Below are positions 1,383-62,774 of a stretch of 64,000 bases of DNA, one piece after another (the first letter of the stretch is position 1; each line of letters begins with the position of its first letter). The DNA lies in assembly GCF_006345805.1 (NCBI RefSeq), contig NC_043014.1, positions 31,000,001 through 31,064,000 on the forward strand. The letters run 5' to 3'. This DNA comes from Octopus sinensis. Lineage: Eukaryota. The notes beneath the pieces are model-generated. The model worked only from the letters and a program-made list of their open reading frames with translations. It was not told where the DNA came from and made no database searches. Position numbers and translations under genes: made by a program.

Positions 1383-1620
1383 TGTGCTGGTGACACATAA
1401 AAGGCATCTGTGCGAGAAACACATAAAAGCACCTGTGCTGGTGACTTGTAAAAGGCACCCACTGCACTTTGTGGAGTGGTTGGTGTTAAGAAGGGCATCC
1501 AACTGTAGAAACCAAACCAAAACAAACTGGAGCTTGGTGCAGTTCTCCAGCTTACCAGTTCTAGTCAAACTGTCTAACGCATGCCAACATAGAAGCTGGA
1601 CACTAAATGATGATGATAGC
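1383..1620 (+). mobile_element. RTE-tail element, three spacer-less units
   Basis: Three degenerate tgtgc..taaaa(g)gca(c/t)c units, then ggagtggttggtgttaagaagggcatccaactgtagaaac and a gatgatgat tail. Confidence 0.72.
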
Positions 1621-12600: not shown

Positions 12601-14546
12601 TATCAATCTAGCAGAATAGTTAGCATGCTGATCAAACTACTTTATGGAATTTCTTCCAGCTTCAAAATCTGATGTAGCCAACTTTGCCTATAAGCACCAG
12701 TTGAACACTGGTGCCAATGTAATGTCACATAAAATTCTTAGAAAATACTTAATGACATTTCTTCTTGCTCTTACATTCTAAGATCAAATTCCGCCAAATT
12801 TTCAGGGTCAATAAAATAGGTGCCAGTTGAACACCAGGGTCGATGTAATCAACTCATCCTCTCTCCCAAAATTGCTGCCCTTGTGGCAAAATTTGAAACC
12901 ATTATTATTATTATTAAAGCAGTGAGCTGATAGAATTGTTAACATGCTAGGCAAAATGCCTAGTGATATTTCGCCTGTTGCTTTGTTCTGAGTTCAGTTT
13001 CTGCTGAGGACAACTTTGCCTTTCATCCCTTTGGGGTCGATAAATTAAATACCAGTGAAACACTGGGGTTTATGTAATCGACTAGTCCTCTCCTACAAAA
13101 ATTTCAGGCCTTGTTCCCTTAGAGTGGATTATTATTATTATTATTACTAGAGTTGCTTGTTATAGATGGGTTTTTATGAACTTGTTTCTGAAAAATATCA
13201 GATAATTTTCCAAATTCAATATTTTTTCATTTTTTCTGATGTTTAATTTTCTTTTTGCTGTCAGTAGGAGCTGTGGGGTTGAGAGCAGTTATTGGGTTGC
13301 TACAGTAGGAGCCAGGAAATTGTATCAACTCTGACTAGATATAAATTGTAATGCATTAAAATTTCCAAATTAACAGATACAGTACTTGACCAAATGTCTG
13401 GCAAGCTTGGGATTGAAGTGTACTGGGTTTCTGGAGTTCCTGGTTTTCTGCATACAGCCTAAATAGGTACTTAAAACGTAAAATAAACTATGAAAAGTAA
13501 AGAGTTAAATTGTATTTACCAGATTCTAGTAAATACTCTTGTAAAGTGGGGTCTGTTTGATATTTATTAATCCATTAAAAATTTTTAAAATATATCATAC
13601 AACATATATACAGTGTAAAGTTTATAAGATGAAAATTAAATTAAAGAAAAGTAAAGAATGTAATTTTATTTAACAGTTACAGGTACAAAGTAATACAATT
13701 ATCAAGCAGAATATGTTTAATCTTTACCAGTCCCACTTAAAACAAAACTATTTTTGACACACTTTTATGCAAATTAGCCAACTTCAAAAGCAGGGCCTGT
13801 TACTCACTACAAGGTACAGTATATTACACAGTATTGCATAGCATTTTCAATTTTCTGAAAATTCTGGATTTCTGGAAGCTGGATAAGAGGTTTGAAATTG
13901 TATTTATTTATTTTCATCTCTGAAAATAATCAAGGTCTTCTTTGAAATATGTGGTGAAAGGAATTCCATTTCTAAGAACAGAATGTTAGTAAATTTTCAG
14001 TTTGTGCTTTGAAATTAACCTGTATTCTAAAGATACAGTTTTTCATTAATAAATTTTGTTGGGGTAAGCCTTTCAGTATTTTCCAATATTATTTCTATTT
14101 CATGTAACCCTTTAGCATTCAGGTTACTCAGTCAAATTTAATGTTTATTTATTCACATTGTTTTGAATTAATTATGTTTTATCTCGTAGTTTTGGGATTT
14201 CGATATAGCAATTACTTATTGTTAGAATGCTGTTGTAGAGTAGATGTGAGAGGCCAAATCTGGCCAGCTTCAACATAAAACACGGTATTTGAAGAACCTG
14301 ATATGATTAGTTTATAATGCTAAAGGATTAATGTAAATTTGGCTACATTCACTTAAATTGTATATTCAGTCAATACTTTAAATTTGTAAAAGAAGGGTTA
14401 TGCATCTAATAGTATTTAGTTTTTGTAAATGGCTTTTTGTTAAGTTACTTGAGGCATTCAGTCTCTTACATATAATTTTGATATAATTTTGATTTTTGGA
14501 TGGTAAACAGTGATATTTTTCATTTTCTCTTATAGTATTTTTAAAG

Positions 14547-14944
14547 ATTACTCTTTTACTTGTTTCAGTCATTTCACTGTAGCCATGCCTTTAGTCGAGC
14601 AAATTGACTACCTTTAGTCGAGTAAATTGACTCCAGGACTTATTCTTTGTAAGCCTAGTACTTATTCTATCAGACTCTTTTGCTGAACCGCTAAGTTACA
14701 GGGATGTAAACACACCAGCATCGGTTGTCAAGTGATGTTGGGGGGACAAACACACACACACACACACACATACATTTATACGATGGGCTTCTTTCAGTTT
14801 CTGTCTACCAAATCCACTCACAAGGCTTTGGTCAGCCCCAGGCTATAGTAGAAGACACATTTGCCCAAAGTGCCACGCAGTGGGAATGAACCCGGAACCA
14901 TGTGGTTGGTAAACAAGCTACTTACCACACAGCCACTCCTGCAT
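14547..14944 (-). mobile_element. SINE family B (tRNA head plus CORE-like domain), full length
   Basis: Minus strand: GCAGGAGTGGCTGTGTGGTAAG..GGGTTCATTCCC (A/B boxes), CORE-like CTTTGGGCAAATGTGTCTTCTACTATAGCC, internal (TG)n and an ..AATGACTGAAACAAGTAAAAGA tail. Resembles the octopus tRNA-derived SINEs; family name not verified. Confidence 0.85.
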
Positions 14945-15487: not shown

Positions 15488-16687
15488 ACACACACACACA
15501 CACACTATACAAATGCCACAACCACAGAACCATAACCCTTTTAACTTAAACTTTAACAAGTCATAGTGCTAAAAATTCACCTGATGATTCTACATTGTTC
15601 GTGTATGTCATGTGCTTTCCGATCAATACAAAATGGAAAAAATAAATAAAATAAAAGTGGTTGTAGTAGGAGGAGACTATTTATAAGCAAAGACTATATA
15701 TAAGCAAAGTGGCAAAATTATATCTCTGATCATTGATTGAATGCACAAATTCATATTTACTCAGTTTACAGTTCATTGCCAATCAGTCTAATATAAAGGC
15801 GTTAAATATCATTTTTACCTGTTACTTTGAAAACAGAAAAAGAAAAAAAAAATTGACCAATATTCTGCTATTTTTATGACTAATGTTTTTTATCAATCTA
15901 TCTATTGACCACTACACTTTTTTTCAATATACATATTTCTACCCAATTTCTCTTATGGCCTTTACACTTCCAACATATATATTTTGATGGCTATATTTTC
16001 AATGAATGTAACTTGGCTTGCACTGAGAAGTGGAATACAAGGTTCACAACCATCATTGGTTGTGCTATCTGATCCTTGACTCATGTCAATGTAGGAAATT
16101 ATTGTTTCCATTATTATTATTATCAAAGTGGCAAGCTGGCAGAATTGTTAGCATATCAGACGAAATGCTTAGTGGTATTAAACCCATCGCTACATTCTTA
16201 GTTCAAATTCTGCTGAGGTTGACTTTGCCTTTCAACCTTTTCAGGTCAATAAATTAAGTACCAGTGAAACACTGGGGTCAATGTAATTAACTGGTCCCCT
16301 CCCACCAGATTTCAGGCCTTGTGCCTTTAGTATAAAGGATTATCATCATCATCATCATCATCATCATCGTTATTATTATTATTATTATTATTAGGCAGTG
16401 AGCTGATAGAATCATTAGCACGCTGGATGAAATGCTTTGCAGTATTTCACCGGTTGCTATGTTCTGAGTTCAAATTCTGCCGAGGTTGACCTTACCTTTT
16501 GTCCTTTCAGGGTCGATAAAATAAGTACCAGTTGAGCACTGGCGTTGATATCGACGTAAAGATGAATGTAAAGATGGATGAAATGCTGATAAGCATTTTG
16601 CCCAGTGCAATAACAATTCTGCCAGTTTGCCACCTTAATAATAATAGTAGTAGTAGTAGTAGTAGTAGTAGTAATAATAATAATAAT

Positions 16688-17417
16688 AGGGAGAGAGGTA
16701 GACCCAGGAAGACATGGGATGAGGTAGTCAAGCATGACCTCAGAGTGTTGGGCCTCACAGAGGCAATGACGAAGGACCGAGATCTCTGGAGATATGCTGT
16801 GACTGCAAAGCCGGGCTGCTTCCTGTACCAGTCCCGCATAGCCCCTGCCTATTCAAAGTACCTTGGATTCCAGAACATCCCGCTGTGCTTGAGGAGATCT
16901 ATTGAGTCAAGTACATGAGCATCGAAATAAATATCAATGGAAATAGTAGTTGTGATACCTGTGCCGGTGGCACATAAAAAGCACCATCCGAACATGGCCG
17001 ATGCCAGCACCGCCTCGACTGGCTTCTGTGCTGGTGGCACATAAAAAGCACCATCCGAACGTGACCGATGCCAGCGCCGCCTCGACTGGCTTCTGTGCCA
17101 GTGGCACATAAAAAGCACCATCCGAACGTGGCCAATGTCAGCGCTGCCTTGACTGGCTTCTGTGCTGGTGGCACGTTAAAAGCACCAACCGATCGTGGCT
17201 GATGCCAGACTCCCCTGGCACCTGTGCCTGTGGCACGTAAAAAGCACCCACTACACTCGCGGAGTGGTTGGCGTTAGGAAGGGCATCCAGCTGTAGAAAC
17301 ACTGCCAGATCAGACTGGAGCCTGGTGCAGCCCCCGGCTTCCCAGACCCCGGTCGAACCGTCCGACCCGTGCTAGCGCGGAAAACGGACGTTAAACGATG
17401 AGGATGCTGATGATGAT
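16688..17417 (+). mobile_element. 5'-truncated RTE LINE: ORF C-terminus, 3' UTR with tandem array, (GAT)n tail
   Basis: RGRPRKTWDEVVKHDLRVLGLTEAMTKDRDLWRYAV is the typical RTE C-terminus. It is followed by a CpG-rich UTR with five repeat units and ...GGACGTTAAAC(GAT)n. Retained CpGs suggest a young copy. Confidence 0.9.
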
Positions 17418-19374
17418 TCACTTTTGCAATTAGTACAACTACCATAAACAAGAGTATCAATTACATTACTTTTTTATCCCAGATATCTAAATTCTCAGTT
17501 GATAGGATCAGAATGAAAAAACAAAAAGAGATATTTCTGTGTGTGCGCACCCATGCTCACACATACACACACATGCACACACGCACACACACACACACAC
17601 ACGCGTGTGTGTGTGTGTGTTCATTTGATCTCTCTGTGTGAAAGATTGTACAATTATCTTTAATAGCCTCCAGATGACCAATACCTTATGAGTGGGATTT
17701 AAGTGACAGAAACTCTGTGGAAGCCCATTGTGTGTGTGTGTGTGTGTGTGGATTTACACCACTGTAAAATGATGTGTTGAAGACAAAAGGTCAATTCATG
17801 ATACAAACATTTTAAAAATAAGTACCACACTAAAATAAATCCTAGGTTTGTTATGATTGATTAAAACCCTTCAAAGTATTGCCCCAGCATAATTGCAATC
17901 TGATGTCTAGAACCAGTAAGATAATATTGGTATACTAACATTTTAACTGGTAATTCTATACTCATTAAATCTGGTTGTGAATATTTATTTCTTAACTCAT
18001 TAGCATTCAGATTACTCTGTCAAATTAATGCTTATTTACATTGTTTAGAATTAATCCTCTGTTATCTTGTAGCTTGGAGATTTCGATGATGTGATTGTTT
18101 ATTTTTGGAATGTCATTGTAGAGTTGGTATGAGAGGCTGGATCTGGTCAGTTTGAACATAAAACGGGTAGAATATTTTAGATGAATATGGCTGGATTAAA
18201 CGTTAAGGGATTTAAGGCTTTTTCTTGACATTAAATTCTATTGGTTTTATTTTTTCTTGGTGCAGTCATTTTTCTTCATACAGTAGTTATTTGTTCTCTT
18301 GAGGAGTGCACACCAATATCGGCTATTTGTTGCCAATCAAGCTGATGATTACAGTTAGCTATCAGGCTGATTGGACAAAACTTTTAGGTCTAGATATATA
18401 CTTTTGAAAGACATAGTTCTGCGTATGCAAGTGTGTGTATACCTCATGGTTAGTTTGTACCCACCACCACCGCCACCACCACCACCACCACCACCACCAC
18501 CACTACTACTACTACTACGACTACTACTACTACTAGAGAGAGAGAGAGAGAGAGAGTTGCCAATTTTAGATATGGAAGCTCTTCCAATTCCTCTCTGGAT
18601 TGATTCATAGAAGAAGCAATTAATAATTTTACATAAACATTCACTAAAAAAAAAAATCTTTTCAACAAGAAATTGAACTGGTTTTGTGTTGAACTGATAT
18701 ATATTATGTCTTGTCAGGTGGTGTTCATGAAAGACACAATAAAATGTAATCTAATTAAGCTTTCCCTGCTCCAACTGCACTGTCACTAAGAGGCTCTTTC
18801 ATTCATCTTGGAGTACTTCAAAGAGTTATTTCTTTTTGAACACTATTTGATCTTAGTTAATTAAACATGTTCTGTAGACACCTCTTCTTTCTGGAACATT
18901 TTGTACTTTCTGTTTGCTGGCATAGACCATCACTTAGCCTGCTCATATTTTATAGCTTCATTTAAACATGTGTAATGTTTGAACTTTTGCTATGAAAGTG
19001 TACCAACTAGAGAATAACATGTGAGTCTGTTTTGCCACATCACATTGCTATTTATCTGTGGAATTTGGTGATAAAGCGTTAAACTGTGAAACATGCTACT
19101 GCTGTGCTGATCTCCTTTCTAACGTAAACTCAAGCTTCCTGTTTTATTTTTGTTTTCAAAGAATAAATACCAAATATTTAAGAGACAGTTTTAAAGAGTT
19201 TATGAACAGGACAGAAAATCCTCATCATGGTTTTAGTGCTTGTTTCTCTCTTGCTGATATTCATTGGATAGGTTTTCTCTGCAGCATTAAGCAATGCAGC
19301 TAAATTTACTTGCAGACTGGCAAAAAATGCTTAAATTATTTTATGTCCATATTTTCATGCTTGCATAATTTGGG

Positions 19375-20938: not shown

Positions 20939-21404
20939 AGAAATAGTGTACGTATGTGTGAAGTGGGGTGAAGGATGTGGTAGATTTTGAAATAACATAG
21001 TCTATAATGAATTAAGCTGAAAGCCTCAAAATACACACATACACACACACCCTGACAAATGTGCATGTATGCACATACATGCACACACACACACACACAC
21101 AGATTAAGTACAATGCATACTGTGCTAGACTGCATGTTAAAGTAGCACTAGCAAATCTTACTACCTTTTATGCATGTTTTTATATTTAACTTTTGGTTTA
21201 AAAGTATCTAATGAAATTGTTTAATAGCCAGATTGTTAAATCTGTGATTAAAAAAAACTAGTTTTAGTAAAATTTTGATACACAGATTATGAAAGTATTC
21301 AACCTTTGCTTCAATTCACAGATCATTCAGATATATTTAATACACTAATTTAGCAAGCATACTTTTTTTTTAATAATTATTCCTAACAAATCACAGCACC
21401 ATTT

Positions 21405-21625
21405 GAGCGTGGCCGTTGCCAGTACCGCCTGACTGGCCCTCATGCCAGTGGCATGTAAAAGCACCCACTATACTCTTGGAGTGGTTGGCGTTAGGAAGGG
21501 CATCCAGATGTAACAACTCTGCCAGATCAGATTGGAGTCTGGTGCAGCCATCTGGTTCGCCAGACCTCAGTCAAATCGTCCAGCCCATGCTAGCATGGAA
21601 AGTGGATGTTGATGATGATGATGAA
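21405..21625 (+). mobile_element. RTE-tail element, single unit
   Basis: gagcgtggccgttgccagtaccgcctgactggc, catgccagtggcatgtaaaagcacc, shared GGAGTGGTTGGCGTTAGGAAGGGCATCC and a (GAT)n tail. Confidence 0.82.
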
Positions 21626-31269: not shown

Positions 31270-32422
31270 GTTATAAAAGCAGGTAGTAATTTTACCTTGT
31301 ATTTATTCTTAGTGCAAGCTTTGAAGAGTGCAGTTCAATTTTAACAGTTATTTTTTTCAAAGCTATAATGTGACAAAGGAACATATTTGGCATTATGGGT
31401 TCAACAAAGGCAACGACACAATAGAAAGTGCAAGGAATATTAATGCAGTATATGGGGATCAGACAATAAGCGTAAGCCAATGTCAACGGTGGTTCCAGAA
31501 ATTCTGAACCAGGAATTACAGCCTAGAAGATGAACATCATCCTGGAATATCTGTAGAGCTCAAAGAGGACATCCTGAAAAACCTGGTGGAATGAAATCTC
31601 ATTATATCTATTGAGGAACTAGTAGAGAAGCTTGGATTTGGTCATTCAACCATTCATTGACACCTGTGTGCTGTCGGAAAAGTCAACAAATTAGGTCAAT
31701 GGTTCCTCACAAATGTTCCAAGTCTAATTACGTGCTCTTCTTTGGTGTCATGTCTCAAGAATGATCTTTTTTGGACTGAATAGTGACAAGAAATAGGTTC
31801 TCTAAAAATGTCAAGTGCTGAAGACAGTGGGTAGGGAAAGGAGAAACATCAGAACCCCAGGCTAAAGAAGGTCTTCATCCACATAAGGTGTTGTTATCTG
31901 TTTGATGGGATATGAAATGTTTAGTTCACTCTGAACTTTTAAACCCAAACCAAACAATAACAAAGGAAATTTACTGCGAGCAGCTTAAGTCAGCGCTAGA
32001 AGGAAAATGACTATCTTTAGTTTCAAGATAAAAGGTGTTCTTCCATCAGGATAAAGCTCAGCCACATGCAACAAGGATGACATTCCAAAGGCCGGAGCAG
32101 TTTGAAAAGAAAACAATGCCCTGCCCACTATATTCACCAGACATTGCTCCATCTGATTGTCATCTATTCCACAGTCTTCAAAATCATTTGGACGGAAAAA
32201 ATATGAATTCTATAGACAAGGTCAGAACAGTACTGGAGGAGTATTATTCGTTATGGACAAGTGAATTTTGGAAGAGAGGCCTTGCAAGCATATCAGTTAG
32301 ATGGAAGAGCATTGTAGAAAATGGAGTATATTTTGAATTAAAAAAGAAGTTTATTTATCTTAATTTTAAAAAATAAAATAAATATACAAAAAGCACATTA
32401 TTTATGGGATGACTCAATTTAT
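31270..32422 (+). mobile_element. Mariner (DD34D) transposon fossil, right TIR retained
   Basis: Frameshifted transposase: VTKEHI..FNKGN..ESARNINAVYGDQTISVSQCQRWFQKF, GKVNKLGQW, LHPHKVLLSV*WD, FHQDKAQPH and YSPDIAPSDCHLF, with 34 residues between the last two Asp. TIR-like end aaaaagcacattatttatgggatgactcaattta at ~32388-32422. No matching left TIR seen. Confidence 0.92.
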
Positions 32423-33069: not shown

Positions 33070-35642
33070 ATATTCATATGTAGCTTTCATTATTCAGGCA
33101 ATGTTTGATTCGTGTCTCTCTGTGGGATGGTAGTTTTTGATTGTTGTCTTTCTTGGGATGGTAATTTCGGTGATTTTGGTATTATTTTTGGTTCAGTTTT
33201 GGTTGGTGTTTTTGAAAAAAATATTCTTCCTTGGCCTTACAGAAATGTTCATTTTCTGTCCATAGTTTGACGAAAGGGAATCTTTTGTATTTTCTTTTCT
33301 CACATTTATTGAAGTGTTCACTGCAAGTTATGTTTCTAACAGAGGAATCATGGATTTGTTGTTTATGTATCCTTACTCACTCATATTATCCAATGCCCAT
33401 TTCACCAATGTAGTACTCTTTGCATTAAGGGCATGCGACACAGTAAATTAGGTTTTTGGATTTGCAATTTATATTTGCATTTATTTTTAAAACATCTTTA
33501 AAAGTAATTTGTTCTCTTTCTTCCATGTAATCACATGTTCTACAATGAGGGTCACCACATTTTTGAACTCTCTTTGTTGTTTCTCTAGTTGTAACTCTTG
33601 CTTGAGTTAAGAGCTTTTTAGGTTGGGTGCTTGACATCTGCTATAAATTATTTTTGAATCTGTTAATTTGTTCATTTTTAATGATTGTTAAAGAACTGGG
33701 AGGTACCTTTTTGCAGTATTGATGATGTCATGATTTCTTGGGTTGTAGGTGATGACAAAAAGAATGCTTATGAGTTCATTTTTATTTTTGTGTGTTTGTT
33801 TTCCTCTGAGGTCAGTAGTTGGAATGTCTTTTGCTTTGGTGATTGCTGTGTCAATTTAGTGGGATACTTTTGTTCTTTTAGAAATATTTTTAATTCTTAT
33901 AATCTTTTCTCCCTTAATTTTGCATCTGTTACTATAGTGCAAATTTGTTTTGCAATATTAACAGGTATGTTTCTTTTGGTGTGTGAGGGATGGGAGGAAT
34001 GAAAGTTCAAATATTGGTGTGTCTCTGTAGGTTTGTAGAAGAGATCTGTTTTATGGTATTATCTTGTTTAATTAGAAATATGTCTAATTTGAAACCAGTC
34101 TATGTATCATAATATTTTTATCCTCATTTTGGTTTAGCTTCTCGTGTTGGTCATTAAGTTGTTCCAAAACCATATCTCTGTAATGGTTCTTGTCCATGAT
34201 AGTTGTTGCTCCACCTTTGTCAGCTTCTTTGAAAATTATCGAAGAGTCTTTTTAAAATTTATTCATGCTTCCAACAGATCTTAAGGTATGTTGGATTTAC
34301 ATTTCTTCTCCATTGCATTAGATGGAGCTGATCATCATAGGTAGCTAATATATTCTTCTGAGTTTTTGTCTCTATTTAAGATAGATCTGAATTCTGTTCT
34401 GTTTTTAACCAGTGATTGTGTATACAGTATTAAGAAAAAAATTATCTCAATCATAATTTTCGGCAAAATTCTTGTGTCTTTTATGAGTTCAGCTTGCTTG
34501 GATTTTGGAGTGGGTGTAAATTTCAATCCATTTTCTAGGATCTTAATTTCTTAGTGGATAAATTTAGTATTTTTGGTTTGCTTATGTGTTTGTTTTCTGT
34601 GTCTCATGAAGAATGGTGCTATTTTTTCTTTTTTTTTTTTGGTGGTTGATCTCCTGTCTTAAAAAATGATTTCCATTGGAATTAGGAGTGTTTTGCATTT
34701 CTCTGTATGAAAACATTTTAGGTTGGTTATTCATAGGTAAGTATGTTCTTGGTTGTTGGATTGGGGGTTGACTCATTATTCTATTGTTGTTCCATGTGGT
34801 TTGTTTGGGTCTATAATTTGGTCTCTGGCAAGTCCTGTTTTATCTTTGGTTAGGGTTCTTTGTTCTATTATTTCTTGTTATATCTGCATATGATCACAAA
34901 TTTGTGTTTCTTAGAGGACGGAGGTATCTGTTTATTTTGTGGGAAAATTTCCTTTCTTTTGGTGTTGTCTCGAGGTCTCAGGGTTGTCATAAACAGGTCA
35001 GTGTTTAGGTTTTATCTGGTTTTTCCCATAGGTGTTTTTGTATTCTTGTAGCCAGAAGATTTTTGATTCCAAGGTCTTACTCTTTGTCTCTTCATGTCTA
35101 GAAGTTTTTTTCAGGGTGGGGGGGATACTTCCACTGCTTCTTTTGTTAATTTCTTCATGTATATAGGTGTCATATTTTTCAAATTTCTTTTGGAAGTTTG
35201 TTGCTCTAAGGCAGAGTAGTGTGATTACTGCTTCAAATCTCTAGTGCTAAATTGAGGTGAATTTGTTTCTTCAATCGATCAACATCAATGGAAATTGTAG
35301 CTGTGATACCAGTGCCGGTGGCACGTAAGAGAACCATCCGAACGTGGCCGTTGCCAGCGCCGCCCCGACTGGCCTCCGTGCCGGTGGCACGTAAAAAGCA
35401 TCATCCGATCGTGGCCGTTTGCCAGCCTCGTCTGGCACCTGTGCAGGTGGCACGTAAAAAGCACCCACTACACTCACGGAGTGGTTGGCGTTAGGAAGGG
35501 CATCCAGCTGTAGAAACACTGCCAGATCAGACTGGGCCTGGCGCAGCCTTCTGGCTTCCCAGACTCCAGTTGAACCATCCAACCCATGCTAGCATGGAAA
35601 ACGGACGTTAAACAATGATAAAATTTCATATCAAAGAAATAA

Positions 35643-35674
<32 letters not shown>

Positions 35675-36190
35675 GACGTTAAACGATGATGATGATGATG
35701 ATGTTATTTCTTTGATATGAAATTTTCTTGGGAGTATTACTTCTCTGCTCCTCCACCATTCATATGTGTTGGCTAGGTTTTCATTTCTTAGAGCTTTCCT
35801 ATATGCTTGTTTTCTTTTATTTGATATACTGTGTGTGCATGTATGTCTGAATAGGTGACCTCACATCAGTAAGCACCCCACTGGTCATTTTTTGACAAGT
35901 CATAACAGTATTGGCCACTCCAAAATATTCCATTTCTTTATTCTTGACTCTCCTTCCCCCTCTATTCACAATTGCTATTAGTCTTATCTTTATTCTTATC
36001 TTTATATTTATTTTTAGCTTTATTTCATTTACTTATTTTTTCCACTTCTTTCTTCCTTGATCTTCTTTTTAAACACATAAGCTTTTATATTTTTTAAAAA
36101 TATATATTTTTGTTATTTAAGCAACTAGTAAAACAAACATTTTTCAGTTTGAAAACAGCTATTTGATGCTTGAAACTCATCAGTCACTCA
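33070..36190 (-). mobile_element. Penelope-like retroelement (Neptune-like), decayed, RT core deleted, interrupted by an RTE-tail element
   Basis: Minus-strand frames, allowing frameshifts, give in order: an N-terminal part (LPRKFHIKE; KFTPTPK), IIFKEADKGGATTIMDKNHY (~34190-34240), and the RT thumb LDIFLIKQ..TDLFYKPTETHQYLNFHSSHPSHTKRNIP (~33960-34088). Then come a Cys linker KCGDPHCRTC and the GIY-YIG domain NLIYCVACP*CKEYYIGE...RIHKQQI...CSEHF...KEEYFFKKHQPKLNQK* (stop 33182-33184). The CX4CX2C linker is characteristic of the Neptune group. Confidence 0.9.
35277..35618 (+). mobile_element. RTE 3'-UTR copy (three repeat units) inserted into the Penelope element
   Basis: Near-identical to 16930-17410: aacatcaatggaaattgtagctgtgatacc, the repeat units, GGAGTGGTTGGCGTTAGGAAGGGCATCCAGCTGTAGAAAC and ...GGACGTTAAAC. 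Confidence 0.88.
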
Positions 36191-37697
36191 CTGTAAACAT
36201 TATTATTAAAATAAAAAATTACCCTAAAAAAAGACATCTCTACTCATTTTCTCATATATATATATAAATATATATTAAGGGAGGGCACATTATTGTTTGT
36301 GCTTTCCTTTTTAAAACAGGATATGGTGTGAGGGTGATTTGTGATTTAGCTAATAGGTCAAACTGTTACAGAGGTTTATCTGGTTCATTAAGAATATGGT
36401 AGACTTGTAAGGAGTGAGTGCAGGCTATAGCACTGATGAAGAAACTTTCCAGCTAACCAGATCTGTAGCATATGATAGGCACCCGGGTCATTGCTCTTTC
36501 TTCTCATACTTACAGTATCCACTTTTAGGTACCACCTTTGAAGGGGATGCATTCCACTTACTCTTGGCACACCAAAACTACATTCAAATGAAAATCCTTG
36601 TTGAAAACTCAGTGGATCACAGTTTTTCATGATTGTGCATTTGCTGTATTGGTCATCTTGTGACTTTTCCATCTCAGTGTCATTGGCTTGTTTATATCTC
36701 TTTAGCTCAAAACAGCCTAAGATGTCTCATTTGTTTTAACTCTGACTGTATCAACTCTCTCTGACACAAAACACCAATAAGTCTACATGAATTGATATGA
36801 ATATATTTGATTATACCATTTTCATTAATTGCTTCCCATCTTTGCTTCCTTTATTCCTAGTCTTAAAGTTTGGTGTACAATTAACTTAATGTATTGACTA
36901 TTTTTATGGTATTCTTTTCTTGCATCTGTCTTGGCAAGGGATTCAGTCAGAGATTGATTTCTATCTTAAGTACAAAACCACAAATTTTTGAGGGGTGGGG
37001 AAAAGGGATAGTTGATTTTATTAACCACAGTTGTTGATTGATGTTTTTATTGAACTTTGTTAGGTCAACTTCAGCGATATATATCATTGCATCTTAATAG
37101 GTCACAACTGGCCATTAGTAAACCTGCATATTAACTGAATTCCTTCCTTTACCATTATTCTTGTTATATGAATTCTTTTATCATATGTCTATATCCAGGC
37201 AGCACATTTTCTCTAGAGTGACATTGCAGAATAGAGAGCATCAATGTTTTAGTTGTAGTGGTATAAAATAGATTTTGATGTAATTTATTGCAGAATGATT
37301 CAACATGCAAATAGCTAACATCTTTCGCAGCATACAAACAACAACATTCTATGGTGTTGTTCAATACTGGATCACAATTTAGTCTGACAAATTTTAACAC
37401 TTTAACATTCAGATTACTCTATGAAATGTAATACTTATTTGTTCACATTGTTTTGAATTAATCATGTATTAACTTGTAGCTTTGAGATTTCAGTGATGTG
37501 ATTGTTTAATTTTAGAATGATATTGTAAGGTTGGTGCGCTGGATCTGGCTGACTTGAACATAAAACAGGCAGATATGACTGGTTTAAATGTTATAAGGTT
37601 AAATATATTTATCTTTCAGCATCTACTCAAAAAGAAATGCTTTTTTCTTATAATCATCATGCTTTCCATCAATAATTTCCTGAAATCATAGTTGTAA

Positions 37698-38040
37698 CTG
37701 GTGCCTGTGCTGGTGGCCCGTAAAAAGTATCCATCGAACTTTGGACCTCAAGGAGGCAGTGACAAGCGACTAACCCCTTTGGCAATATACTATGCTTGAG
37801 AAGACCTGTCAAGCCAAGTGAGAGTGCAGTTGAGGCTAATGCCAATGTTTCATAACTGGCACCTGTGCTGGTGGCATGTAAAAAGCACCCACTACACTCT
37901 TGGAGTGGTTGGCATTAGGAAGGCTATCCAACTGTAGAAACCATGCTAAATCAGATTGGAATGTGGTGCAGCTTACCAGTTTTCAGTTAAACTGTCCAAC
38001 CTATGCTAGCATGGAAAATGAATGTTTGATAATGATGATA
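37698..38040 (+). mobile_element. RTE-tail element with rearranged order (unit, ORF end, unit, tail)
   Basis: Repeat unit at ~37706, then decayed (R)TLDL.EAVTS....LWQY..LEKTCQAK* ORF-end DNA, a second unit at ~37864, and the shared tail. Confidence 0.72.
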
Positions 38041-39525
38041 GTTTCTGCTGTACGGGTGCACTTTCATCTTCCTGAGGTTTGTGCAGTCTTTTGAGAGTGT
38101 AACGTTGTGTAGATGTTTTGCTTTTGTTACGTCTGGTGTTACTTTAGCGTTTAATCTGTTTGTTGAGGAATATGTTCAATGTGAGTTGTCATTTCATTGG
38201 GTGATGATGATTGTGTCTTGTATGTGCTGTGTGAAATGTGTTGCCAGGGAATTGATTGGTTATATAGGATCTGAGTTGTCAATGCTTTAATATCAGAAGT
38301 TGGTTTTGTTGTATCATTTTATTAGGAGGTGATAGTATATTAGGTTACATTGTTTTGTGTGAGTTGTGTTCTTTTATTAGGTGGTGATTATCTAAGGTGT
38401 GTGGTATGCACAGAAAACACTATTTAAATTGATATTTTTAAACTGAATGTAAAATTATGATCCCTTTGTTTTCATTAAAGTTCTTTTCATCATTCCTAGT
38501 GCTCCAAATGCTACTTATTTCAATTTTAAGATCTTTGTACCTTGGCAGTTTCTCAACTTCCTTCCAGACTATGTTTTAGTCAGAAGGCATTGGGATGCCT
38601 GTCAGAGTACAGAAACGTTCATCCCTGTCTTCATTAATTATATCTGGACAAGTAAAAAATATTTTGTACTACTTTAATTATTTATTTATTTTTTATCTAA
38701 ATATTCTTAAATATACTAATAGGTGAATTTTGTCTTTTTTTTTATCCTTTTGTGATCAATAAGCAAAGTATTAGTCAGAGCAATAGACTGGTGGAATTGT
38801 TAGGATACTGGACAAGCTGTTTTGCAGTGTCTGCTACAACTATGAACAATTCCTTTATGAGTCCAATAATGGAGCCTCTAGGTAACTACTACATATCTTA
38901 GTAACAGTAGTCAAATTTCCCTCATAACTTAAAAGGTTAAGACATTGGATATTGTAGTCAGTCCTAGATATGCTGTGTCTCAATAAAAAGCTAGATTGTC
39001 ACAGAACAGTTTTGGTCACAGAGCTCTACTGGATCAGGATAACAGCAATCAACAACTTTGCCAGTAGAGGAAATCATCACCACCACCATCACTGCATGTA
39101 TTAGTATCATCAGCACCACTACTTCAATAAAAAAAAATCACAAAAATAAACAATCATCATTACTCTCATAACTGCTAATGTCACCATCGCTACCATCATC
39201 AGCACCATCACACCACCACACCTGCTTGGCAACATTGACATCAGTTAACACTTATGCTTTCATTTAAAGTGATGGAGTTGGTGGTGATGAGGAGGAAGAG
39301 GATTGTGATGATACTGATGAAGACTAATGATGATGATGACGGTTATGATTGAGTGCAGCAAAATAGTTTTATGATTGGTTATCTTCTCTAATATTTATGG
39401 TTCCGATTAATCTTTATTTTTTTGTTTCTTTTTCTTTCCCTATATGTGGCCTTGATTATTTTTATCATGGCTTCATGTTATCTAAGTGGTGTGTGCGTCT
39501 CATTTGCACACATACATTTGTACAT

Positions 39526-42500: not shown

Positions 42501-45500
42501 GATGTCTGTTTACAAGGCAGGTTTAGTGTAAAATGGAAGTTAGGTAGTGGGATAGGAAGACTGGGAATAGAAATTCAATCTGAATAGCAGTGGGTGTAGG
42601 TGGAGAGGGAGGAGTGAAGAGAGAGAGAAGGAGATTGGAAAAGGACAGTTACAAGGGAAGGCATGTGAGATTAGGGGTGAGATACTCATGATACTAATAT
42701 TTGTGTGTAGTGAAGTGTAGTTAATTTTTAAATGTGCAATGTTTTTATTGTGTAGAATATAAATATCATTTGCTGTGTATCAAGGAATATGAAGTACTTG
42801 TATCTAGATATGCAAGTCATTGTTTACAACACATTATGCCCAGCTAAGTATGTAAATGCACATGCACACAAGTGTCCACTAAGCAAATTTGTGCTGAGGA
42901 GTGAAAATGCATATTTTGGGCATTTACCCTTCTTCAAAGCTAAATAGAGACTACATAGAAGTGTTGTTTGCCTTGGTCACAGAAATGTGAATGAAAAATT
43001 GTGTAAGATTGTGGGAAAAGCCTGTGATAGTTGGTGTGAGTAGCATCTGAAGTAAAGAATTGGGAAGGAAGTAAAGTGTATGGAAGAGTTACTAGAGGAG
43101 GAGGCCAAAGTTTGTAAGAAACTGAAATTCAATTGAAATAGGAGATAGGTGATGAGGGCCAAGTCAGATGAGGTGAAAATTAGTATTAAGAGCATAGGGC
43201 AAAGAAAAGAGAGGGGTAAAGGTACAATCACAATAACATAGATATAGGAGAAAGGGAATGATAGAGAAAAAGGGCAGAGTATTGAGAATATAAAGAATTA
43301 AGAGGCAGTAAAGACTGATCATAACTGTAAAGAAAATATGCATGTGTGTACATGTTTTTTCAAATGTTGTAAACAAAGTTTGTAAAGGAAGTGGAAAAGA
43401 GTACTCAATACATGATGCAAATTTTAAACTGTTTAAACTGAATTCTCTTTCTCATCATCTGCATAATTTGACATCTGTATTCCATGCTGACACAGGTGGG
43501 ACAGTTTGACAGGATTTGACAAATCCAAGGACACCTTTGTGCTCCAATGTCTGCTTAGGCATAGTTTCTCTGGCTGGATGCACTTCCTAACACTTTATTG
43601 CATGTGCTGAGTGCTTTTTTCAGGGTACCAGTACTATTGAGATCACCGTGCAGCTTGCTAGACTAAAAATCTCCTTTGGCTGAGTGGGGCTACAACAAAG
43701 AGTTTGCTCTATGATAGGAAATGAGGAGTATTAAAGTATGAGAGAAGGAACTAGAATGGAACAGGTTTCTTGTTGTTGAAGAGCTATATTGTTACAAGCA
43801 TCATAGAAGATAAGATGGGAATGACCTGGGTGAAGCTGGAAAAAGATAAAAAATAGTGGTGTGGTTTCAGAGGGACCTCAATGAACAGAATAAAGAATGT
43901 GGGTGGGTAGGGGTTGCAAGGATATGGGAGAGTGATAGATGGTTAGGGATGGGAAATAGGTGCAGGGGTGAATATATAATGGAGAAAAAGTGTTGAGAGA
44001 TAATAAGGGAAGGTATAGAATAGTAGGTAACAAGTGTAGAGGCTGTTTAGAGTTGAAGAGTGGATGTAGTGAATTAATAGAGGGTATGGGTTGATAGATA
44101 TGATACAAATAAGTTAAGGGAGGGCAAGTGAGCTGGGTAGGTTGCAAGAGCATGAAGGGAGAAGCAGGCTTAGCGTATAGAAAGAGTGAGAGATGTATAG
44201 AGGAGAGATAATATACAGGGTCATCAGTACTTGAATTTTAGATTATAGAAATTGTTCTGGTGACTCACTCTGTGTTTTAAGATGGTTTTATATACATTCA
44301 AGTGAACTTATTCCCCTGTGTGTGCATTGTTTTCATTGATTATTTACTATGTATTATCATATTTGAGTGTTATCTTCTAGATTATCATCATTTTGTCACT
44401 TTTCATTAGTCAGTTCATCAATTGGTTGATTCTGTTATTATATTTGGTTTCTCTCATTCACTTTTGTGGGTTAATTTGTTGGTCATTTTGATGGGGTCTA
44501 CATGGACTCTAACTGTTTATATGATGCTGTTAAATGTTATTCTTTGATATGCTGTTTTATTTAGTCCTCTAAATTGTCATTTGTCTTCATCGGTTAATTT
44601 GTTGCTCACCAAGTAGTTTATTTGGTTGATTCACTTTATTGTACCCTGTTACTCTAATTTATTATTCTGCTGGGGTTTTGCATTATCACTGCAAGTGTCC
44701 CATCTGATGTTACTCAATTTTATTCTGCTATGCTGGTTTTCATTCCATTTGTTTCCTTTAAGTTGTTCTGATTTATACTGTTGATGCTGAGAGTGTAATT
44801 AAATGATAGTTTGTGGTATATTGTTATTTTCTTCTTACAGTCCATTGGGTATTGAGTTTTGGGGTATGTGCAATATTCTGTTTTTCATTCTGTTGATTAT
44901 CATTGTGTCTCTTCTGCTAGGGAACCTTCAGATGTTGAGTCTCTTTTAAATGTATTCCACTTCTTAAAAATGAATTTATTTTGGTGTCTGCAATGTGATT
45001 TTACTGCATTTCTTTTGTTAAACAAACATATCTGTGGTGTAATTATATTTTAGCCTACAGGGGGAAAATATTGAAGCTATTCACATAAGGGGAGGTTCTA
45101 TTATTGTCTTTCATTTCTTCCCTTTATGTACCAAGTTTGCTTCAATAAAGATTTTGCTTTCCTTCTGTTTTTATTGCAAGGGAAAGGCATGCATGGTGTG
45201 TGTATCCAACCTTGAACGTTCTGCTTATGCTCTAATAATAATTTCTTTTATCAGTTTTTCTCCAATATCCACTCAACTGTCACATACACATATACACATG
45301 ATGGACTTTAGTTTCTACTTACCAATTGCAATCAGAAGGCTTTAGTTAGCACAAGGCTATAGTACAAGACACTTGCCCAAGATACTGTGCAGTGGGGAAT
45401 CCAAAATTGTGGTTAGGATGCAAACTCCCTAAACACAGTCATGGCTGCACCTCAAATAACTTCCATTTGACCCATGCTTATTATTATTATTATTATTAAG

Positions 45501-50630: not shown

Positions 50631-50739
50631 ATTATGTATTTATGAATTACTCTTTTCTTAATTCAATGTGTTGGTCTTATATCTTTGGATTTTCCCTTAA
50701 CACATTTTCATTATTCTTTTTCTTTTTGTTTCACAATAG

Positions 50740-50914
50740 GTGACAAGTTTCGGATGGTGATAGCTACAACTTTACGTGAAGATGGCTATCCTGATGATGG
50801 GGAATATTCACCTGTTGATAGTGGCCCAACCCGAGCAGACAGCTTTGAATATGTTATGTATGGAAAGGTTTATAAATTGGAAGGTGATGAGACCGGCGCT
50901 GACTCTGGAAGACT
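50740..50914 (+). CDS. POLR2H: Internal coding exon of DNA-directed RNA polymerases I/II/III subunit RPABC3 (RPB8)
   Basis: Translates as (G)[57 protein letters not shown](L), matching the central RPB8 segment (human, from memory: [60 protein letters not shown]). Polypyrimidine tract plus AG at 50738-50739 (phase 1). Donor CT|GTAAGT at 50915 (phase 2). Confidence 0.95.
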
Positions 50915-54790: not shown

Positions 54791-55209
54791 TCTTCTCAGA
54801 GACATGCACACCCACATGCAGACACCTAATATAATACTTATGTTATATTATAGTAGACAGAATGAAATACTCTGGCAGACGTGGGTACCATAGTGTGTTT
54901 GCAGTACTACCCCTGTGTGAACACAGCTGGTGGTATCTGGTTCTGTTTGAGCAATCTCTTCTCATCATAGCCCTACAGTTCTTTCATCACACACACACAC
55001 ACCTCCCCCATTTCCCACCTTTTCTTTTACCATCATTTTCTATAATCACCACCACCACCATCTCCATTATGATTATGATCATACTTCCTATATCTTTCTT
55101 TCTAAATACAATGTTAACATCAATAAAACACCAGTGTCAATTACATCAACTGTGTCCACCATCCTTGTCCTTGACAAACTAACTGACCACACAATTCCAA
55201 CAAAGAACT

Positions 55210-61400: not shown

Positions 61401-62774
61401 GAGCAGGCTACATGTATATACGTTCTCAAAATAATCTTGTTGTGACCAGAGAGTTTACTTGGTATTGGATATTCATTGTGTACAGTGTGTCTAATCAATT
61501 TAATCACAGTTGCTTTTATAATATTCTCTAACCAAAACTCAAACTATACACACCAATATGCATATAAAATAAAATATAGTAAGTAATAATACAGAATTAC
61601 AGCATATAAATAAATAATAAATAAAAAAAATGTGATAACCACTAAAAAATATTCTGTAATGCAAATATATGACCATATAGATTTTCAAAAAACTATGTAC
61701 ATACAACGAATTTGGATAAATCTTTTAAATTAACATAAACATCTATTTATATGAAAGGAAATAACTGGAGATATAACACATGTTGTGCTAAAAATAATAG
61801 CTAAATAAGATTTTTGGGATTAATCTTCAATTAACATAAATATTTATTTACATGAAAATAAAATGATAACTTCCAAGTCCTGTTTCCTGACTGGGTCACC
61901 ATGCAGGTGGACAGTCGAAATAAATATATAGACAAAATCCTTTCACTTTTATAAAAAGATTAAAAAAGTATGGAAGACCCTATGTACAAAGAAACTATGT
62001 CCATTTACAACCATTTACACAGGAGCTCTGGGCAAAATATAGTGCATGACCATCCTTGGGATGTAAGTAATGTGTGTGTAAAGTTTGAAGAAAATTGGTT
62101 GAGAATTGTGGAAATGTATGCATTAGTCATTATACATACACACACTGTGGTTTATATATATTAGATGTATATACACACACATACTGTGATTTATATATAC
62201 TAGATATATATATACACGCAGGTTTTTGAATTTGTGTTTGTTTACACACGCGCACACATCATCATCATCATTTAAAATACATTTTCCATGCTGGTATGGA
62301 GTGGACAGTTTGACAAGAGCTGGCAAGTTGGAGAGCTGCACCAGGCTCAAATTGTCTGTTTTGGCACAATTTCTACAGCTGATGCCCTTCCTAATGCCAA
62401 CCACTTAACAGAGTGTATGGAGTGCTTTTTACAAAGCACCAGCACGGGTTCTTTATATGTGGGGACTCCAGCACCCGTGAGTGCTGTAATATCTACTTTA
62501 CCATGTTTGCATGGGTCAAATGAATATTATTGAGTTTGATTTTGTACAGCCAAGTGAAATTCCTGTCATGAGCCCCCACCTGTCTCCAAGCTAGGAAATA
62601 GTTCTTTGTGACCAGACAAGGTTTTGCAGAATATTGGAAATTATTGACACCACTTGTATGATAATGATACTCATTTACAACTATCAGGCAATATCAAGAC
62701 AAGGAGATGCAAGCAGAGAGAGACATGCGCACACTCTCTTTCTCTCTCTCTCTCTCTCACACGCGCACATACAC

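What the first reader, a model, noticed from the sequence alone, without database searches (positions are those of the whole stretch)
16960..17248. Tandem array of five compact H-type pseudoknot motifs in an RTE 3' UTR
Seen: five units start at 16960, 17027, 17094, 17161 and 17223 (period 67, 67, 67, 62). Each has a 26-nt core like TGTGC-C-GGTG-GCACA-TAAAAAG-CACC. This parses as stem 1 UGUGC/GCACA, a 1-nt loop, stem 2 GGUG/CACC and a 7-nt A-rich loop. Across copies in the window the 1-nt loop varies freely (C/T/A) and the outer stem-1 pair is U-A, U-G or C-G. Each spacer holds its own hairpin (GCCAG...CTGGC). Known: this geometry is that of luteoviral frameshift-type pseudoknots, and RTE retroelements are known to carry structured or self-cleaving RNAs. 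Inference: this is an amplified RNA structural module (RT docking, translation, stability or an unrecognised ribozyme). I know of no description of it. Caveats: some covariation could be CpG decay, units 3 and 5 have a mismatch at the end of stem 2, and a simple GUGCC/GGCAC hairpin is a competing fold.
Basis: partly seen in the sequence, partly recalled or inferred. Interest (0 to 1): 0.72.

Follow-up and report, generated by a model that had tools for sequence, protein, structure and literature searches.

The report
Tandem repeat in octopus RTE tail
The five repeats are real, but they are a variable tandem duplication in the 3' untranslated end of a dead RTE-like jumping gene in an octopus genome, and nothing in the sequences available shows that they fold into pseudoknots rather than plain hairpins.

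Summary
There are five 26-nt cores at 16960, 17027, 17094, 17161 and 17223 (period 67/67/67/62). They lie 42 nt after the stop codon of a reverse-transcriptase C-terminal remnant and directly before a conserved ~150-nt tail that ends in a (GAT)n run. The host is an Octopus genome.

The pseudoknot reading is not supported:
- RNAfold puts each core into the plain 6-bp hairpin UGUGCC/GGCACA. No fold is better than shuffled sequence.
- Across 22-24 cores, stem 2 shows no compensatory change and is broken in 8 copies.
- At non-CpG sites the stems vary about as often as the A-rich loop.
- The apparent stem-1 covariation sits on the two CpGs that end the palindrome CGTGCC..GGCACG.
- A 4-bp loop-to-downstream match arises by chance in 9-50% of comparable sequences.

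Copy number differs between insertions (5, 4, 3, fewer), and units match each other by position. So this is a variable tandem repeat that evolved in the element lineage.

One point favours function. The core and the spacer stem arms GCCAG/CTGGC are much better conserved than the rest of the spacer. They may be a cis-element of the 3' region.

A pseudoknot is not excluded. The sample is small.

The parts
16690..16918 (+). C-terminal remnant of the reverse-transcriptase ORF of a 5'-truncated RTE-like LINE (GRPRKTWDEVVKHDLRVLGLTEAMTKDRDLWRYAV...), stop TGA at 16916-16918. It starts right after a (TAATAG)n run at 16636-16689.
   Evidence: Translation. Homologue P0001, 79% identity, has the same C-terminal motif. 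Microsatellite.
16919..16959 (+). 41-nt 3' UTR leader between the stop codon and the first core. It is shared with the copy at 35278-35310 and with L009.
   Evidence: blastn and sequences.
16960..17248 (+). The tandem array: three 67-nt units, one 62-nt unit and a terminal core. GC 0.58, CpG observed/expected 0.74, against 0.355 and 0.22 for the whole window.
16960..16985 (+). Core 1, TGTGCCGGTGGCACATAAAAAGCACC
   Evidence: folds as the 6-bp hairpin, -7.8 kcal/mol
17027..17052 (+). Core 2 (C6 to T, a CpG-type change)
17094..17119 (+). Core 3 (G7 to A, a CpG-type change; breaks pair 7-26 of the proposed stem 2 but leaves the 6-bp hairpin intact)
17161..17186 (+). Core 4 (T6, G15, T17)
17223..17248 (+). 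Core 5, the terminal core, running straight into the tail (G7 to T breaks pair 7-26)
17003..17023 (+). Spacer hairpin of unit 1: GCCAG (17003-17007) / CTGGC (17019-17023) around an 11-nt loop. Equivalent arms in later units: 17070-17074/17086-17090, 17137-17141/17153-17157 (GUCAG, with one G-U pair), and 17204-17208/17215-17219 (6-nt loop).
   Evidence: Sequence. The arms are kept in all 12 aligned units (two changes, both giving G-U pairs), while the loop varies from 5 to 11 nt.
17249..17396 (+). Conserved 3' tail of the family (CACTACACTC..GGAGTGGTTGGCGTTAGGAAGGGCATCCAGCTGTAGAAAC ... CATGCTAGCATGGAAAACGGACGTTAAAC)
   Evidence: 16 tail copies in 84 kb of octopus DNA; alignment A1
17397..17417 (+). 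Terminal degenerate (GAT)n microsatellite, the 3' end of the insertion
   Evidence: Sequence. All tail copies end in (GAT/ATG)n.
35278..35619 (+). Second 5'-truncated copy of the same family, with a 3-core array (35311, 35377, 35440; period 63-66) and tail
37697..38041 (+). Older copy: a core at 37706, a 132-nt insert containing an RT C-terminal remnant, a second core at 37864, then the tail
21395..21624 (+). Copy truncated inside a unit. Its core at 21441 reads CATGCC..GGCATG.
1383..1620 (+). Old copy with three core-only units (period about 25-26, no spacer) and tail
62257..62446 (-). Old-subfamily copy. Its core reads CGTGCTGGTGCTTTGTAAAAAGCACT: stem 1 cannot form, but GGUGCUUU/AAAGCACU can.

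Best explanation
The array is a variable-number tandem duplication inside the 3' UTR of a 5'-truncated, and therefore dead, insertion of an RTE-like LINE family that is very abundant in Octopus genomes.

Each 62-67-nt unit has three parts:
- a short palindrome, UGUGCC-GGU-GGCACA, which folds as a 6-bp hairpin;
- the A-run plus GCACC, an old and highly conserved motif at the 5' edge of the family's 3' tail;
- a CpG-rich spacer holding a second small hairpin (GCCAG/CTGGC) with a hypervariable loop.

Shown: the array already existed in the master elements, because units in different insertions match by position. Unit number changed within the lineage (5, 4, 3, fewer). The differences among units 1-3 of this array are all transitions, 7 of 9 of them at CpG sites.

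Inferred: units are gained and lost by slippage, unequal exchange or reverse-transcriptase template switching between the repeated GGCAC/GCACC words that flank every core. In the active RNA, the conserved core and hairpin arms probably belong to the 3' region that the element's own reverse transcriptase recognises to start target-primed reverse transcription, as in stringent-type LINEs. They would act as ordinary stem-loops, and the extra copies would be neutral or nearly so. An H-type pseudoknot is not needed to explain anything seen.
For: - The array and cores are real.
- The context is an RT C-terminus, then a 3' UTR, then a conserved tail, then (GAT)n.
- The family is abundant: 16 tails in 84 kb.
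- The host is an Octopus: the O. vulgaris chromosome OX597840.1 carries a 4-unit copy whose tail is 89% identical.
- Copy number varies: 5, 3 and 4 units, and 3 in L010.
- Units match by position between insertions: first units 92%, penultimate short units 83-89%, against 63-75% for other positions. Units 1-3 of this array are 90-94% alike.
- The 9 differences among units 1-3 are all transitions, 7 of them CpG-type. The array's CpG observed/expected is 0.74, against 0.22 for the window.
- The minimum-energy fold of the core is the 6-bp hairpin (-7.8 kcal/mol, 74% of the ensemble). Stem 1 alone is -5.2 and stem 2 alone -3.4.
- RNAalifold on 12 units gives three nested hairpins with a covariation term near zero.
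- Non-CpG variation is 0.046 in the core, 0.00-0.02 in the spacer stem arms, 0.28 in the spacer loop and 0.16 in the spacer overall.
- The A-run plus GCAC is nearly invariant in 15 tail copies that were found through the tail rather than through the core.
- Stringent-type LINE proteins are known to bind a stem-loop in their own 3' tail (PMC4176376). RTE elements are known to end in labile tandem repeats (PMC5850137).
Against: - The sample is small: 24 cores from 84 kb plus one 587-bp contig, many of them duplicates of each other. The covariation tests therefore have little power.
- The strong conservation of the whole 26-nt core, including GGUG, the A-rich loop and CACC, is also what a compact pseudoknot with tertiary contacts would show.
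- L010, the copy that gives the sharpest contrast between core and spacer, was found through a search that depended on conserved cores. That is ascertainment bias.
- A rough pseudoknot energy is about -6.3 kcal/mol. This is my own arithmetic, adding the Dirks-Pierce pseudoknot penalty, recalled from memory, to the stem energies. It is within about 1.5 kcal/mol of the hairpin, so thermodynamics does not exclude the pseudoknot.
- Recognition by the reverse transcriptase is inferred by analogy with L2-clade LINEs and was not tested for any RTE.
- Assignment to the RTE clade rests on a C-terminal motif and the type of tail, not on a phylogeny.
Confidence: 0.6

Rival explanations
1. Each unit really folds into a compact H-type pseudoknot: stem 1 UGUGC/GCACA, a 1-nt loop, stem 2 GGUG/CACC, and a 7-nt A-rich loop lying in the minor groove of stem 1. 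The array would then be an amplified structured module of the RTE RNA, serving reverse-transcriptase docking, exonuclease resistance, stability or translation.
For: - The geometry is compatible with the sequence in every young unit.
- Stem-2 cells form a standard pair in 91.8% of cases.
- The whole core is highly conserved between diverged arrays.
- Older subfamilies keep a GGUGC/GCACY helix that contains the stem-2 pairs.
- My estimated pseudoknot energy is comparable to that of the hairpin.
Against: - No stem-2 pair changes on both sides.
- Pairing equals that of column shuffles: 89.2% against 88.7 +/- 0.7, with 185 of 500 shuffles as high.
- Stem 2 is disrupted in 8 of 24 copies, including units 3 and 5 here.
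- Non-CpG substitution rates are 0.065 in stem 2, 0.076 in stem 1 and 0.095 in the loop, so they do not differ clearly.
- The stem-1 double changes sit on CpGs.
- Three nested competitors use the same bases.
- A 4-bp loop-to-downstream complement arises by chance in 9-20% of controls with Watson-Crick pairs only, and in 24-50% when G-U is allowed.
- Fold energies are not better than shuffles (z from -0.1 to -2.0 for single cores, -1.25 for the whole array).
Confidence: 0.07
2. The multiplicity itself is selected. The units are nested-hairpin binding sites for the element's protein or a host factor, and more units give a master element a retrotransposition or RNA-stability advantage through a dosage effect.
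For: - The core and the GCCAG/CTGGC arms are conserved while the loops and linkers drift.
- Arrays are present in at least three diverged lineages: this array, the 35311/L009 group, and L010. A core-only triplet is at 1383.
Against: - Unit number is not fixed, ranging from 1 to 5.
- Old copies with a single core also spread.
- There are no data on which copies are active.
- Independent tandem amplification is equally expected from repeat-prone sequence flanked by GCACC words.
Confidence: 0.2
3. The element acts at the DNA level. The palindrome TGTGCC-N3-GGCACA would be a binding site for a dimeric DNA-binding protein, or the array would be the seed of a satellite, and RNA structure would be irrelevant.
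For: - The palindrome is perfect.
- Tandem repeats derived from parts of retroposons are known to grow into satellites (PMC10702118).
Against: - No long arrays were seen in the 84 kb available.
- Conservation extends over the non-palindromic A-run and GCACC.
- Nothing here tests protein binding.
Confidence: 0.04
4. The array encodes a repetitive protein on the minus strand. The O. vulgaris annotation carries such a gene model, P0083.
For: - All three minus-strand frames are open across the array.
- P0083, a 'hypothetical predicted protein' of O. vulgaris, lies on the homologous array in L009.
Against: - The period of 67 or 62 is not a multiple of 3, so the frame rotates from unit to unit and no peptide repeat is kept.
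- P0083 has no Pfam match.
- Only 2 similar proteins turned up in 5.8 billion clusters.
- A 67-nt unit free of stops is expected by chance at about 4% (my own arithmetic) and is then copied by the duplication.
Confidence: 0.01

Closest known systems
RTE-clade non-LTR retrotransposons, whose 3' ends consist of a short UTR ending in labile simple tandem repeats
   Same: An RT C-terminal motif is followed by a short UTR and a terminal (GAT)n run instead of poly(A). Most copies are 5'-truncated. The family is abundant in octopus, where RTE elements are reported as active.
   Different: The known labile repeats are terminal tri- to pentanucleotide repeats. Here there is an additional internal 62-67-nt minisatellite upstream of a ~150-nt unique tail. 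Clade membership was not tested by RT phylogeny.
Internal variable tandem repeats and retroposon-derived tandem arrays (for example SINE-derived satellites in squamates, PMC10702118; from general knowledge, the VNTR of SVA elements and the 5' monomers of mouse L1)
   Same: Part of the element is duplicated head to tail, and copy number differs between copies.
   Different: These arrays are short (5 units or fewer) and stay inside the 3' UTR. No satellite-scale expansion was seen.
3' tail stem-loop of stringent-type LINEs, recognised by the element's own ORF2 protein (ZfL2-1 and ZfL2-2, PMC4176376; UnaL2 from general knowledge)
   Same: A conserved 3' region with short hairpins lies upstream of a terminal simple repeat. 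This is the most plausible job for the conserved core and tail.
   Different: Those are L2-clade elements with one defined stem-loop next to the terminal repeat. Here the hairpin module lies about 150 nt upstream and is repeated. No binding data exist.
Luteovirid -1 frameshift H-type pseudoknots (BWYV type)
   Same: On paper the geometry is alike: a 5-bp stem 1, a very short loop 1, a short stem 2 and a 7-nt A-rich loop.
   Different: There is no slippery heptamer, no overlapping ORF, and the array lies 42 nt past a stop codon in a UTR. There is no evolutionary support for stem 2. The BWYV loop 1 of 2 nt, with its base quadruple, is not matched (general knowledge).
Upstream pseudoknot domain of tobamovirus 3' UTRs (consecutive pseudoknots; general knowledge)
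   Same: It would be the nearest functional analogue if the pseudoknots were real: several pseudoknots in a row in a 3' UTR upstream of a terminal recognition structure.
   Different: Those pseudoknots abut one another. Here 36-41 nt of spacer with their own hairpins separate the cores, and the pseudoknots themselves are unsupported.
HDV-like self-cleaving ribozymes of RTE, R2 and L1Tc retrotransposons (general knowledge)
   Same: A structured RNA carried by the same class of element.
   Different: Those sit at the 5' end. No Rfam ribozyme family matches this region even at E up to 10.

Membership tests
RTE-clade LINE (3' end) | Single ORF with an apurinic-type endonuclease and an RT that groups with RTE in an RT phylogeny | not testable with these tools
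   The copy is 5'-truncated and only about 76 C-terminal residues remain. Pfam finds no domain in them. The one close homologue is a 105-aa fragment.
RTE-clade LINE (3' end) | 3' end formed by simple tandem repeats rather than poly(A) | tested here: met
   All tail copies that reach their 3' end finish in (GAT/ATG)n.
RTE-clade LINE (3' end) | Many 5'-truncated copies sharing the 3' end | tested here: met
   16 tail copies in 84 kb. At most two reach ORF-derived sequence: this copy, and an RT C-terminal remnant read by eye at 37706-37860.
Retroelement-internal variable tandem repeat | Head-to-tail units whose number differs between copies of the element | tested here: met
   5, 3 and 4 units, and 3 in L010, in four insertions. 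Units match by position.
H-type pseudoknot (structural class) | Two helices, the second pairing the loop of the first with downstream bases, both supported by covariation or probing | tested here: inconclusive
   The sequence is compatible. Stem 2 has 0 double changes and pairing equals shuffles. The stem-1 double changes are on CpGs. Nested alternatives fit equally well. The sample is small.
Luteovirid-type frameshift pseudoknot | Slippery heptamer 5-9 nt upstream and an overlapping -1 ORF | tested here: not met
   The array starts 42 nt after the stop codon and all downstream frames close at once.
Any described RNA family, including self-cleaving ribozymes, tRNA and tmRNA | Match to an Rfam covariance model or an ARAGORN call | tested here: not met
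   No hit at gathering thresholds in the window. Only two noise hits at E up to 10 in 16600-17450, both outside the array. No tRNA.
Stringent-type LINE 3' recognition stem-loop | Conserved 3' tail with a stem-loop bound by the element's own protein | not testable with these tools
   A conserved tail and hairpin arms are present. RNAalifold on the tail gives only a weak long-range helix whose double changes are again CpG-linked. Binding needs experiments.
Tobamovirus-type tandem pseudoknot domain | Consecutive pseudoknots stacked without long spacers | tested here: not met
   Cores are separated by 36-41 nt spacers that hold their own hairpins.

The most novel reading that the evidence does not exclude
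In the young lineage of this octopus RTE family, a C-to-G change at core position 11 created stem 1 next to an older GGUGC/GCACC helix. Each unit would then fold into a BWYV-like compact H-type pseudoknot with an A-rich minor-groove loop. The element would have amplified this knot into an array that works as a 3' UTR module for reverse-transcriptase docking, exonuclease resistance or RNA stabilisation. That would be a new class of retrotransposon cis-RNA.
Probability: 0.07. Interest if true: 0.6.

Novelty: new member of a known kind. Interest (0 to 1): 0.2.

Why it matters
As it stands, this is ordinary retroelement anatomy: a minisatellite in a LINE 3' UTR.

It has three modest uses:
- It is a worked example of how CpG decay at the two ends of a palindrome mimics compensatory base-pair changes.
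- It marks a 26-nt core and a hairpin with conserved arms as candidate cis-elements of an RTE family. That family is of interest because RTE elements are reported to be expressed in the octopus brain.
- It flags at least one spurious gene model, P0083, in an octopus annotation.

If the pseudoknot were real, it would be a new structured RNA class in retrotransposons.

Tried and rejected
**Attempts to collect more copies, mostly unsuccessful**
- The scan of viral contigs found nothing.
- The metagenome scan gave one chance hit inside a bacterial gene.
- The prokaryote genome scan gave one chance hit in Bartonella.
- A protein search with the RT C-terminus gave one 105-aa fragment on a 570-bp contig.
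- I found an RPB8 exon in the window and used it to look for orthologous loci. The best hits were only 85% identical, and their contigs (L003-L008) lack the element.
- A search with the minus-strand ORF of the array gave the only useful extra DNA: L009 from O. vulgaris and L010.
- An exact look-up of a window ORF found nothing on record.
- A literature search for the core and tail sequences found no paper, and the one repeat-annotation supplement held no library.

**Ideas rejected**
- The unit is a diverged copy of part of the tail. The local alignment score of 17 is reached by 123 of 500 shuffles.
- The unit derives from a tRNA or other known small RNA.
- Frameshift or readthrough signal, rejected on context.
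- A SINE shares the tail but lacks the 5' half of the core. I withdrew this: the tRNA-like head at 49791-50010 and the tail at 49593-49790 are separated by a (TCTA)n-like run and are probably two insertions, and the other 15 or so heads have no such tail.
- Minus-strand coding, rejected because the period is not a multiple of 3 and there is no domain.

Full report
**1. The observation**

The region reads exactly as described. Tandem Repeats Finder reports one array at 16959-17248: period 67, 4.4 copies, 85% matches. The 26-nt core TGTGCCGGTGGCACATAAAAAGCACC is found with 3 or fewer mismatches at 16960, 17027, 17094, 17161 and 17223. Three further copies lie at 35377, 35440 and 37864. No shuffle of the window gives any match. 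The five units are duplicates of one ancestral unit, so the pseudoknot-compatible parse counts as one observation, not five.

**2. Context**

- Frame 2 of 16690-16918 translates to GRPRKTWDEVVKHDLRVLGLTEAMTKDRDLWRYAV... and stops at 16916-16918.
- The only close database relative is a 105-aa RT C-terminal fragment carrying the same motif.
- Downstream of the array lies a ~150-nt unique tail ending in GGACGTTAAAC(GAT)n.
- blastn finds 16 copies of this tail in the 64-kb window plus 20.4 kb of Octopus vulgaris chromosome OX597840.1 and a 587-bp ENA contig. All that reach their 3' end finish in (GAT/ATG)n.
- The O. vulgaris copy has a tail 89% identical to this one, so the window is from an Octopus genome.

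Together these features fit a 5'-truncated RTE-like LINE: an RT C-terminal motif, a short UTR, a tail with a terminal simple repeat, and many truncated copies. This matches published descriptions of RTE elements. I could not test the clade by phylogeny. The window also holds an RPB8 exon at 50736-50909.

**3. The array is a variable tandem repeat of the element lineage**

Other insertions carry 3 cores (35311/35377/35440), 4 cores (L009), 3 cores plus a deleted last one (L010), 2 separated cores (37706/37864), or three core-only units with no spacer (1383-1459).

Units correspond by position between insertions:
- first units: 35311 against L009 10387, 92%;
- penultimate short units: 17161, 35377 and L009 10260, 78-89%;
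- non-corresponding units: 63-75%.

So an array of at least two units was already present in a master element. Units 1-3 of this array are 90-94% identical to one another. Their nine differences are all transitions, seven of them CpG-type. The array has GC 0.58 and CpG observed/expected 0.74, in a window with GC 0.355 and CpG observed/expected 0.22. Variation among these three units therefore looks like decay after duplication in a CpG-depleted genome. Every core is flanked by GGCAC/GCACC words, which are obvious substrates for slippage or template switching. That mechanism is an inference.

**4. Test of the pseudoknot**

*Thermodynamics*
- RNAfold puts the core into the 6-bp hairpin UGUGCC/GGCACA with a GGU loop: -7.8 kcal/mol, 74% of the ensemble.
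- z-scores against dinucleotide shuffles run from -0.1 to -2.0. The whole array gives z = -1.25.
- Stem 1 alone is -5.2, stem 2 alone -3.4, and the alternative helix GUGC/GCAC (2-5 with 22-25) -2.5 kcal/mol.
- Adding the stem stacking energies to a Dirks-Pierce-type pseudoknot penalty gives about -6.3 kcal/mol. This is my own arithmetic, with the penalty recalled from memory. The pseudoknot is neither favoured nor excluded.

*Chance*
- A 4-bp complement between the 5-nt hairpin loop and the next 20 nt arises in 9-20% of controls with Watson-Crick pairs only, and in 24-50% when G-U is allowed.

*Evolution: 24 cores tabulated by hand and 22 distinct cores in alignment A3*
- For the proposed structure, 89.2% of cells are paired, against 88.7 +/- 0.7 for column shuffles; 185 of 500 shuffles do as well.
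- Stem 2 has no pair that changes on both sides.
- Stem 2 is disrupted in 8 of 24 copies (A7, U7, A7A8, A8, U8, A23).
- The only other stem-2 changes are C-to-U opposite G, which keep a wobble pair automatically.
- Non-CpG substitution rates are 0.095 in the loop, 0.076 in stem 1 and 0.065 in stem 2.

*The stem-1 "covariation"*
- The only pairs with double changes are 1-15 (UA/UG/CG) and 2-14 (GC/GU, and AU once).
- These are the two CpGs that end the palindrome CGTGCC..GGCACG.
- CG-to-TG on one arm and CG-to-CA on the other give U-A or A-U pairs with no selection needed. Three of the four double-decay outcomes still pair.

*Competitors*
- The helix 2-6 with 21-25 fits as well, at 86%.
- RNAalifold on 12 whole units gives three nested hairpins: 1-6/10-15, CCAU/GUGG (which uses the 3' arm of stem 2), and GCCAG/CTGGC. 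The covariation term is 0.08.

**5. What does look constrained**

- At non-CpG sites the core varies at 0.046 per cell and the spacer at 0.163. Within the spacer, the GCCAG and CTGGC arms vary at 0.02 and 0.00, and the loop between them at 0.28. That loop ranges from 5 to 11 nt.
- Between this array and L010, the core is 99% identical at non-CpG sites, the spacer 62% and the tail 85.5%. L010 was found through a search that depended on conserved cores, so that contrast is biased.
- In the tail alignment, whose copies were found through the tail, the A-run plus GCAC is among the most conserved stretches.
- Older subfamily copies (62446-, 63213+, L009 18736-, 43634-) read AGTGCTGGTGCYNTGTAAAAAGCACY. 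They have C at position 11, so stem 1 cannot form, but a GGUGC/GCACY helix can.

The conserved theme is an A-rich stretch bracketed by GUGC/GCAC-type words. The 6-bp palindrome is a feature of the young lineage. This supports a cis-acting role for the core in the active RNA. It does not show which helix forms.

**6. Comparison with what is known**

- No Rfam family matches the region at gathering thresholds or at E up to 10, and there is no tRNA.
- A luteovirid-type frameshift signal is excluded by context.
- The closest known things are RTE 3' ends with labile tandem repeats, retroposon-internal tandem arrays, and the 3' stem-loops that stringent-type LINE proteins bind.
- No paper in the searchable library contains the core or tail sequence.

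**7. Verdict**

This is a real tandem array in an RTE-like 3' UTR of an octopus. It is best explained as a variable tandem duplication that reiterates a conserved hairpin and A-run motif from the element's 3' recognition region. The H-type pseudoknot is a possible but unsupported fold (about 7%). Interest is low (0.2). The finding is a new member of a known kind.

Noticed in passing
window 35620-35726: A 42-nt perfect inverted repeat (35620-35661 / 35685-35726: flank plus (ATC)n against (GAT)n plus flank). It surrounds a 23-nt centre holding a second copy of the extreme RTE 3' end (CAGACGTTAAAC), directly after the RTE copy at 35278-35619. It could be a foldback made at insertion or an assembly artefact.
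   Followed up: partly
window 50736-50909 (+): An exon of RNA polymerase subunit RPB8 (POLR2H): 67% identical to the human protein over 58 aa, Pfam PF03870 at E 2.9e-13. No other exon of the gene was detected in the window.
   Followed up: partly
L009 10001-10414 (O. vulgaris OX597840.1) and window 16899-17174 (-): The minus strand of the array is open in all three frames. The O. vulgaris annotation carries a 137-aa 'hypothetical predicted protein' (P0083) that is just such an ORF across the homologous array. It is very likely a spurious gene model.
   Followed up: partly
window 1383-1459 (+): An old copy of the family has three core-only units in tandem (period about 25-26 nt) with no spacer. 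The core has therefore been amplified independently, in a different format.
   Followed up: no
window 37706-37889 (+): Two cores are separated by 132 nt. By eye, that stretch includes a remnant of the RT C-terminal coding region (compare 16750-16790). This suggests a rearranged or chimeric copy in which a core lies upstream of ORF-end sequence.
   Followed up: no
window 62421-62446 (-), 63213-63238 (+), 43609-43634 (-); L009 18711-18736 (-): Old-subfamily cores share C at position 11 and T at position 14 (GTGCTGGTGCYNTG TAAAAAGCACY). The GCAC arm of stem 1 is a derived feature of the young lineage. In the copy at 62446 the motif forms a 7-bp hairpin, GUGCUUU/AAAGCAC.
   Followed up: partly
window 49791-50010 (-) and about 15 other sites (for example 14783-14937, 59715-59870, 55852-56030): An abundant SINE-like repeat about 150 nt long, whose start looks tRNA-like by eye. 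There are about 16 copies in the window and 5 in L009. ARAGORN calls no tRNA. The one at 49791-50010 abuts an RTE tail copy, but they appear to be separate insertions.
   Followed up: partly
window 16500-16689 (+) and, by eye, 465-668, 12811-12993, 45432-45608, 45651-46106: A second repeat family ending in (TAA/TAG)n or (AAT)n runs. Its translations share the motif DEMPL.ILPSML.ILP. The RTE copy studied here starts directly after the microsatellite of one of them.
   Followed up: no
alignment A1 columns 77-90 with 184-200 (window about 17273-17286 with 17359-17374): RNAalifold predicts a long-range helix in the conserved tail (UGGCGU..GGA.GG with CC.UCC..GUGCUA, as read in this copy). Three pairs change on both sides, but at least one of them (columns 80/197) sits on CpG sites, so the support is weak.
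   Followed up: no
L002 520-570 (ENA metagenome contig, related RT C-terminus): About 80 nt after the stop codon of a related RT, from another sample, the 3' UTR reads GGTGCCGGTGCCGGTGTGTCGCGGCACATTGAAA. This resembles the core: GUGCC...GGCAC followed by an A-rich stretch. The contig ends there.
   Followed up: no
window 32035-32376 (+) and 55183-55527 (+): By eye, the first ORF looks like a mariner-type transposase C-terminal fragment (...LYSPDIAPSDCHLFHSLQNHL...) and the second like another LINE C-terminal fragment (...TTWLDVIMEDFQRFKVTLEDLVRLTWDHQQWRALV). Neither reaches any Pfam model at E up to 0.1.
   Followed up: partly
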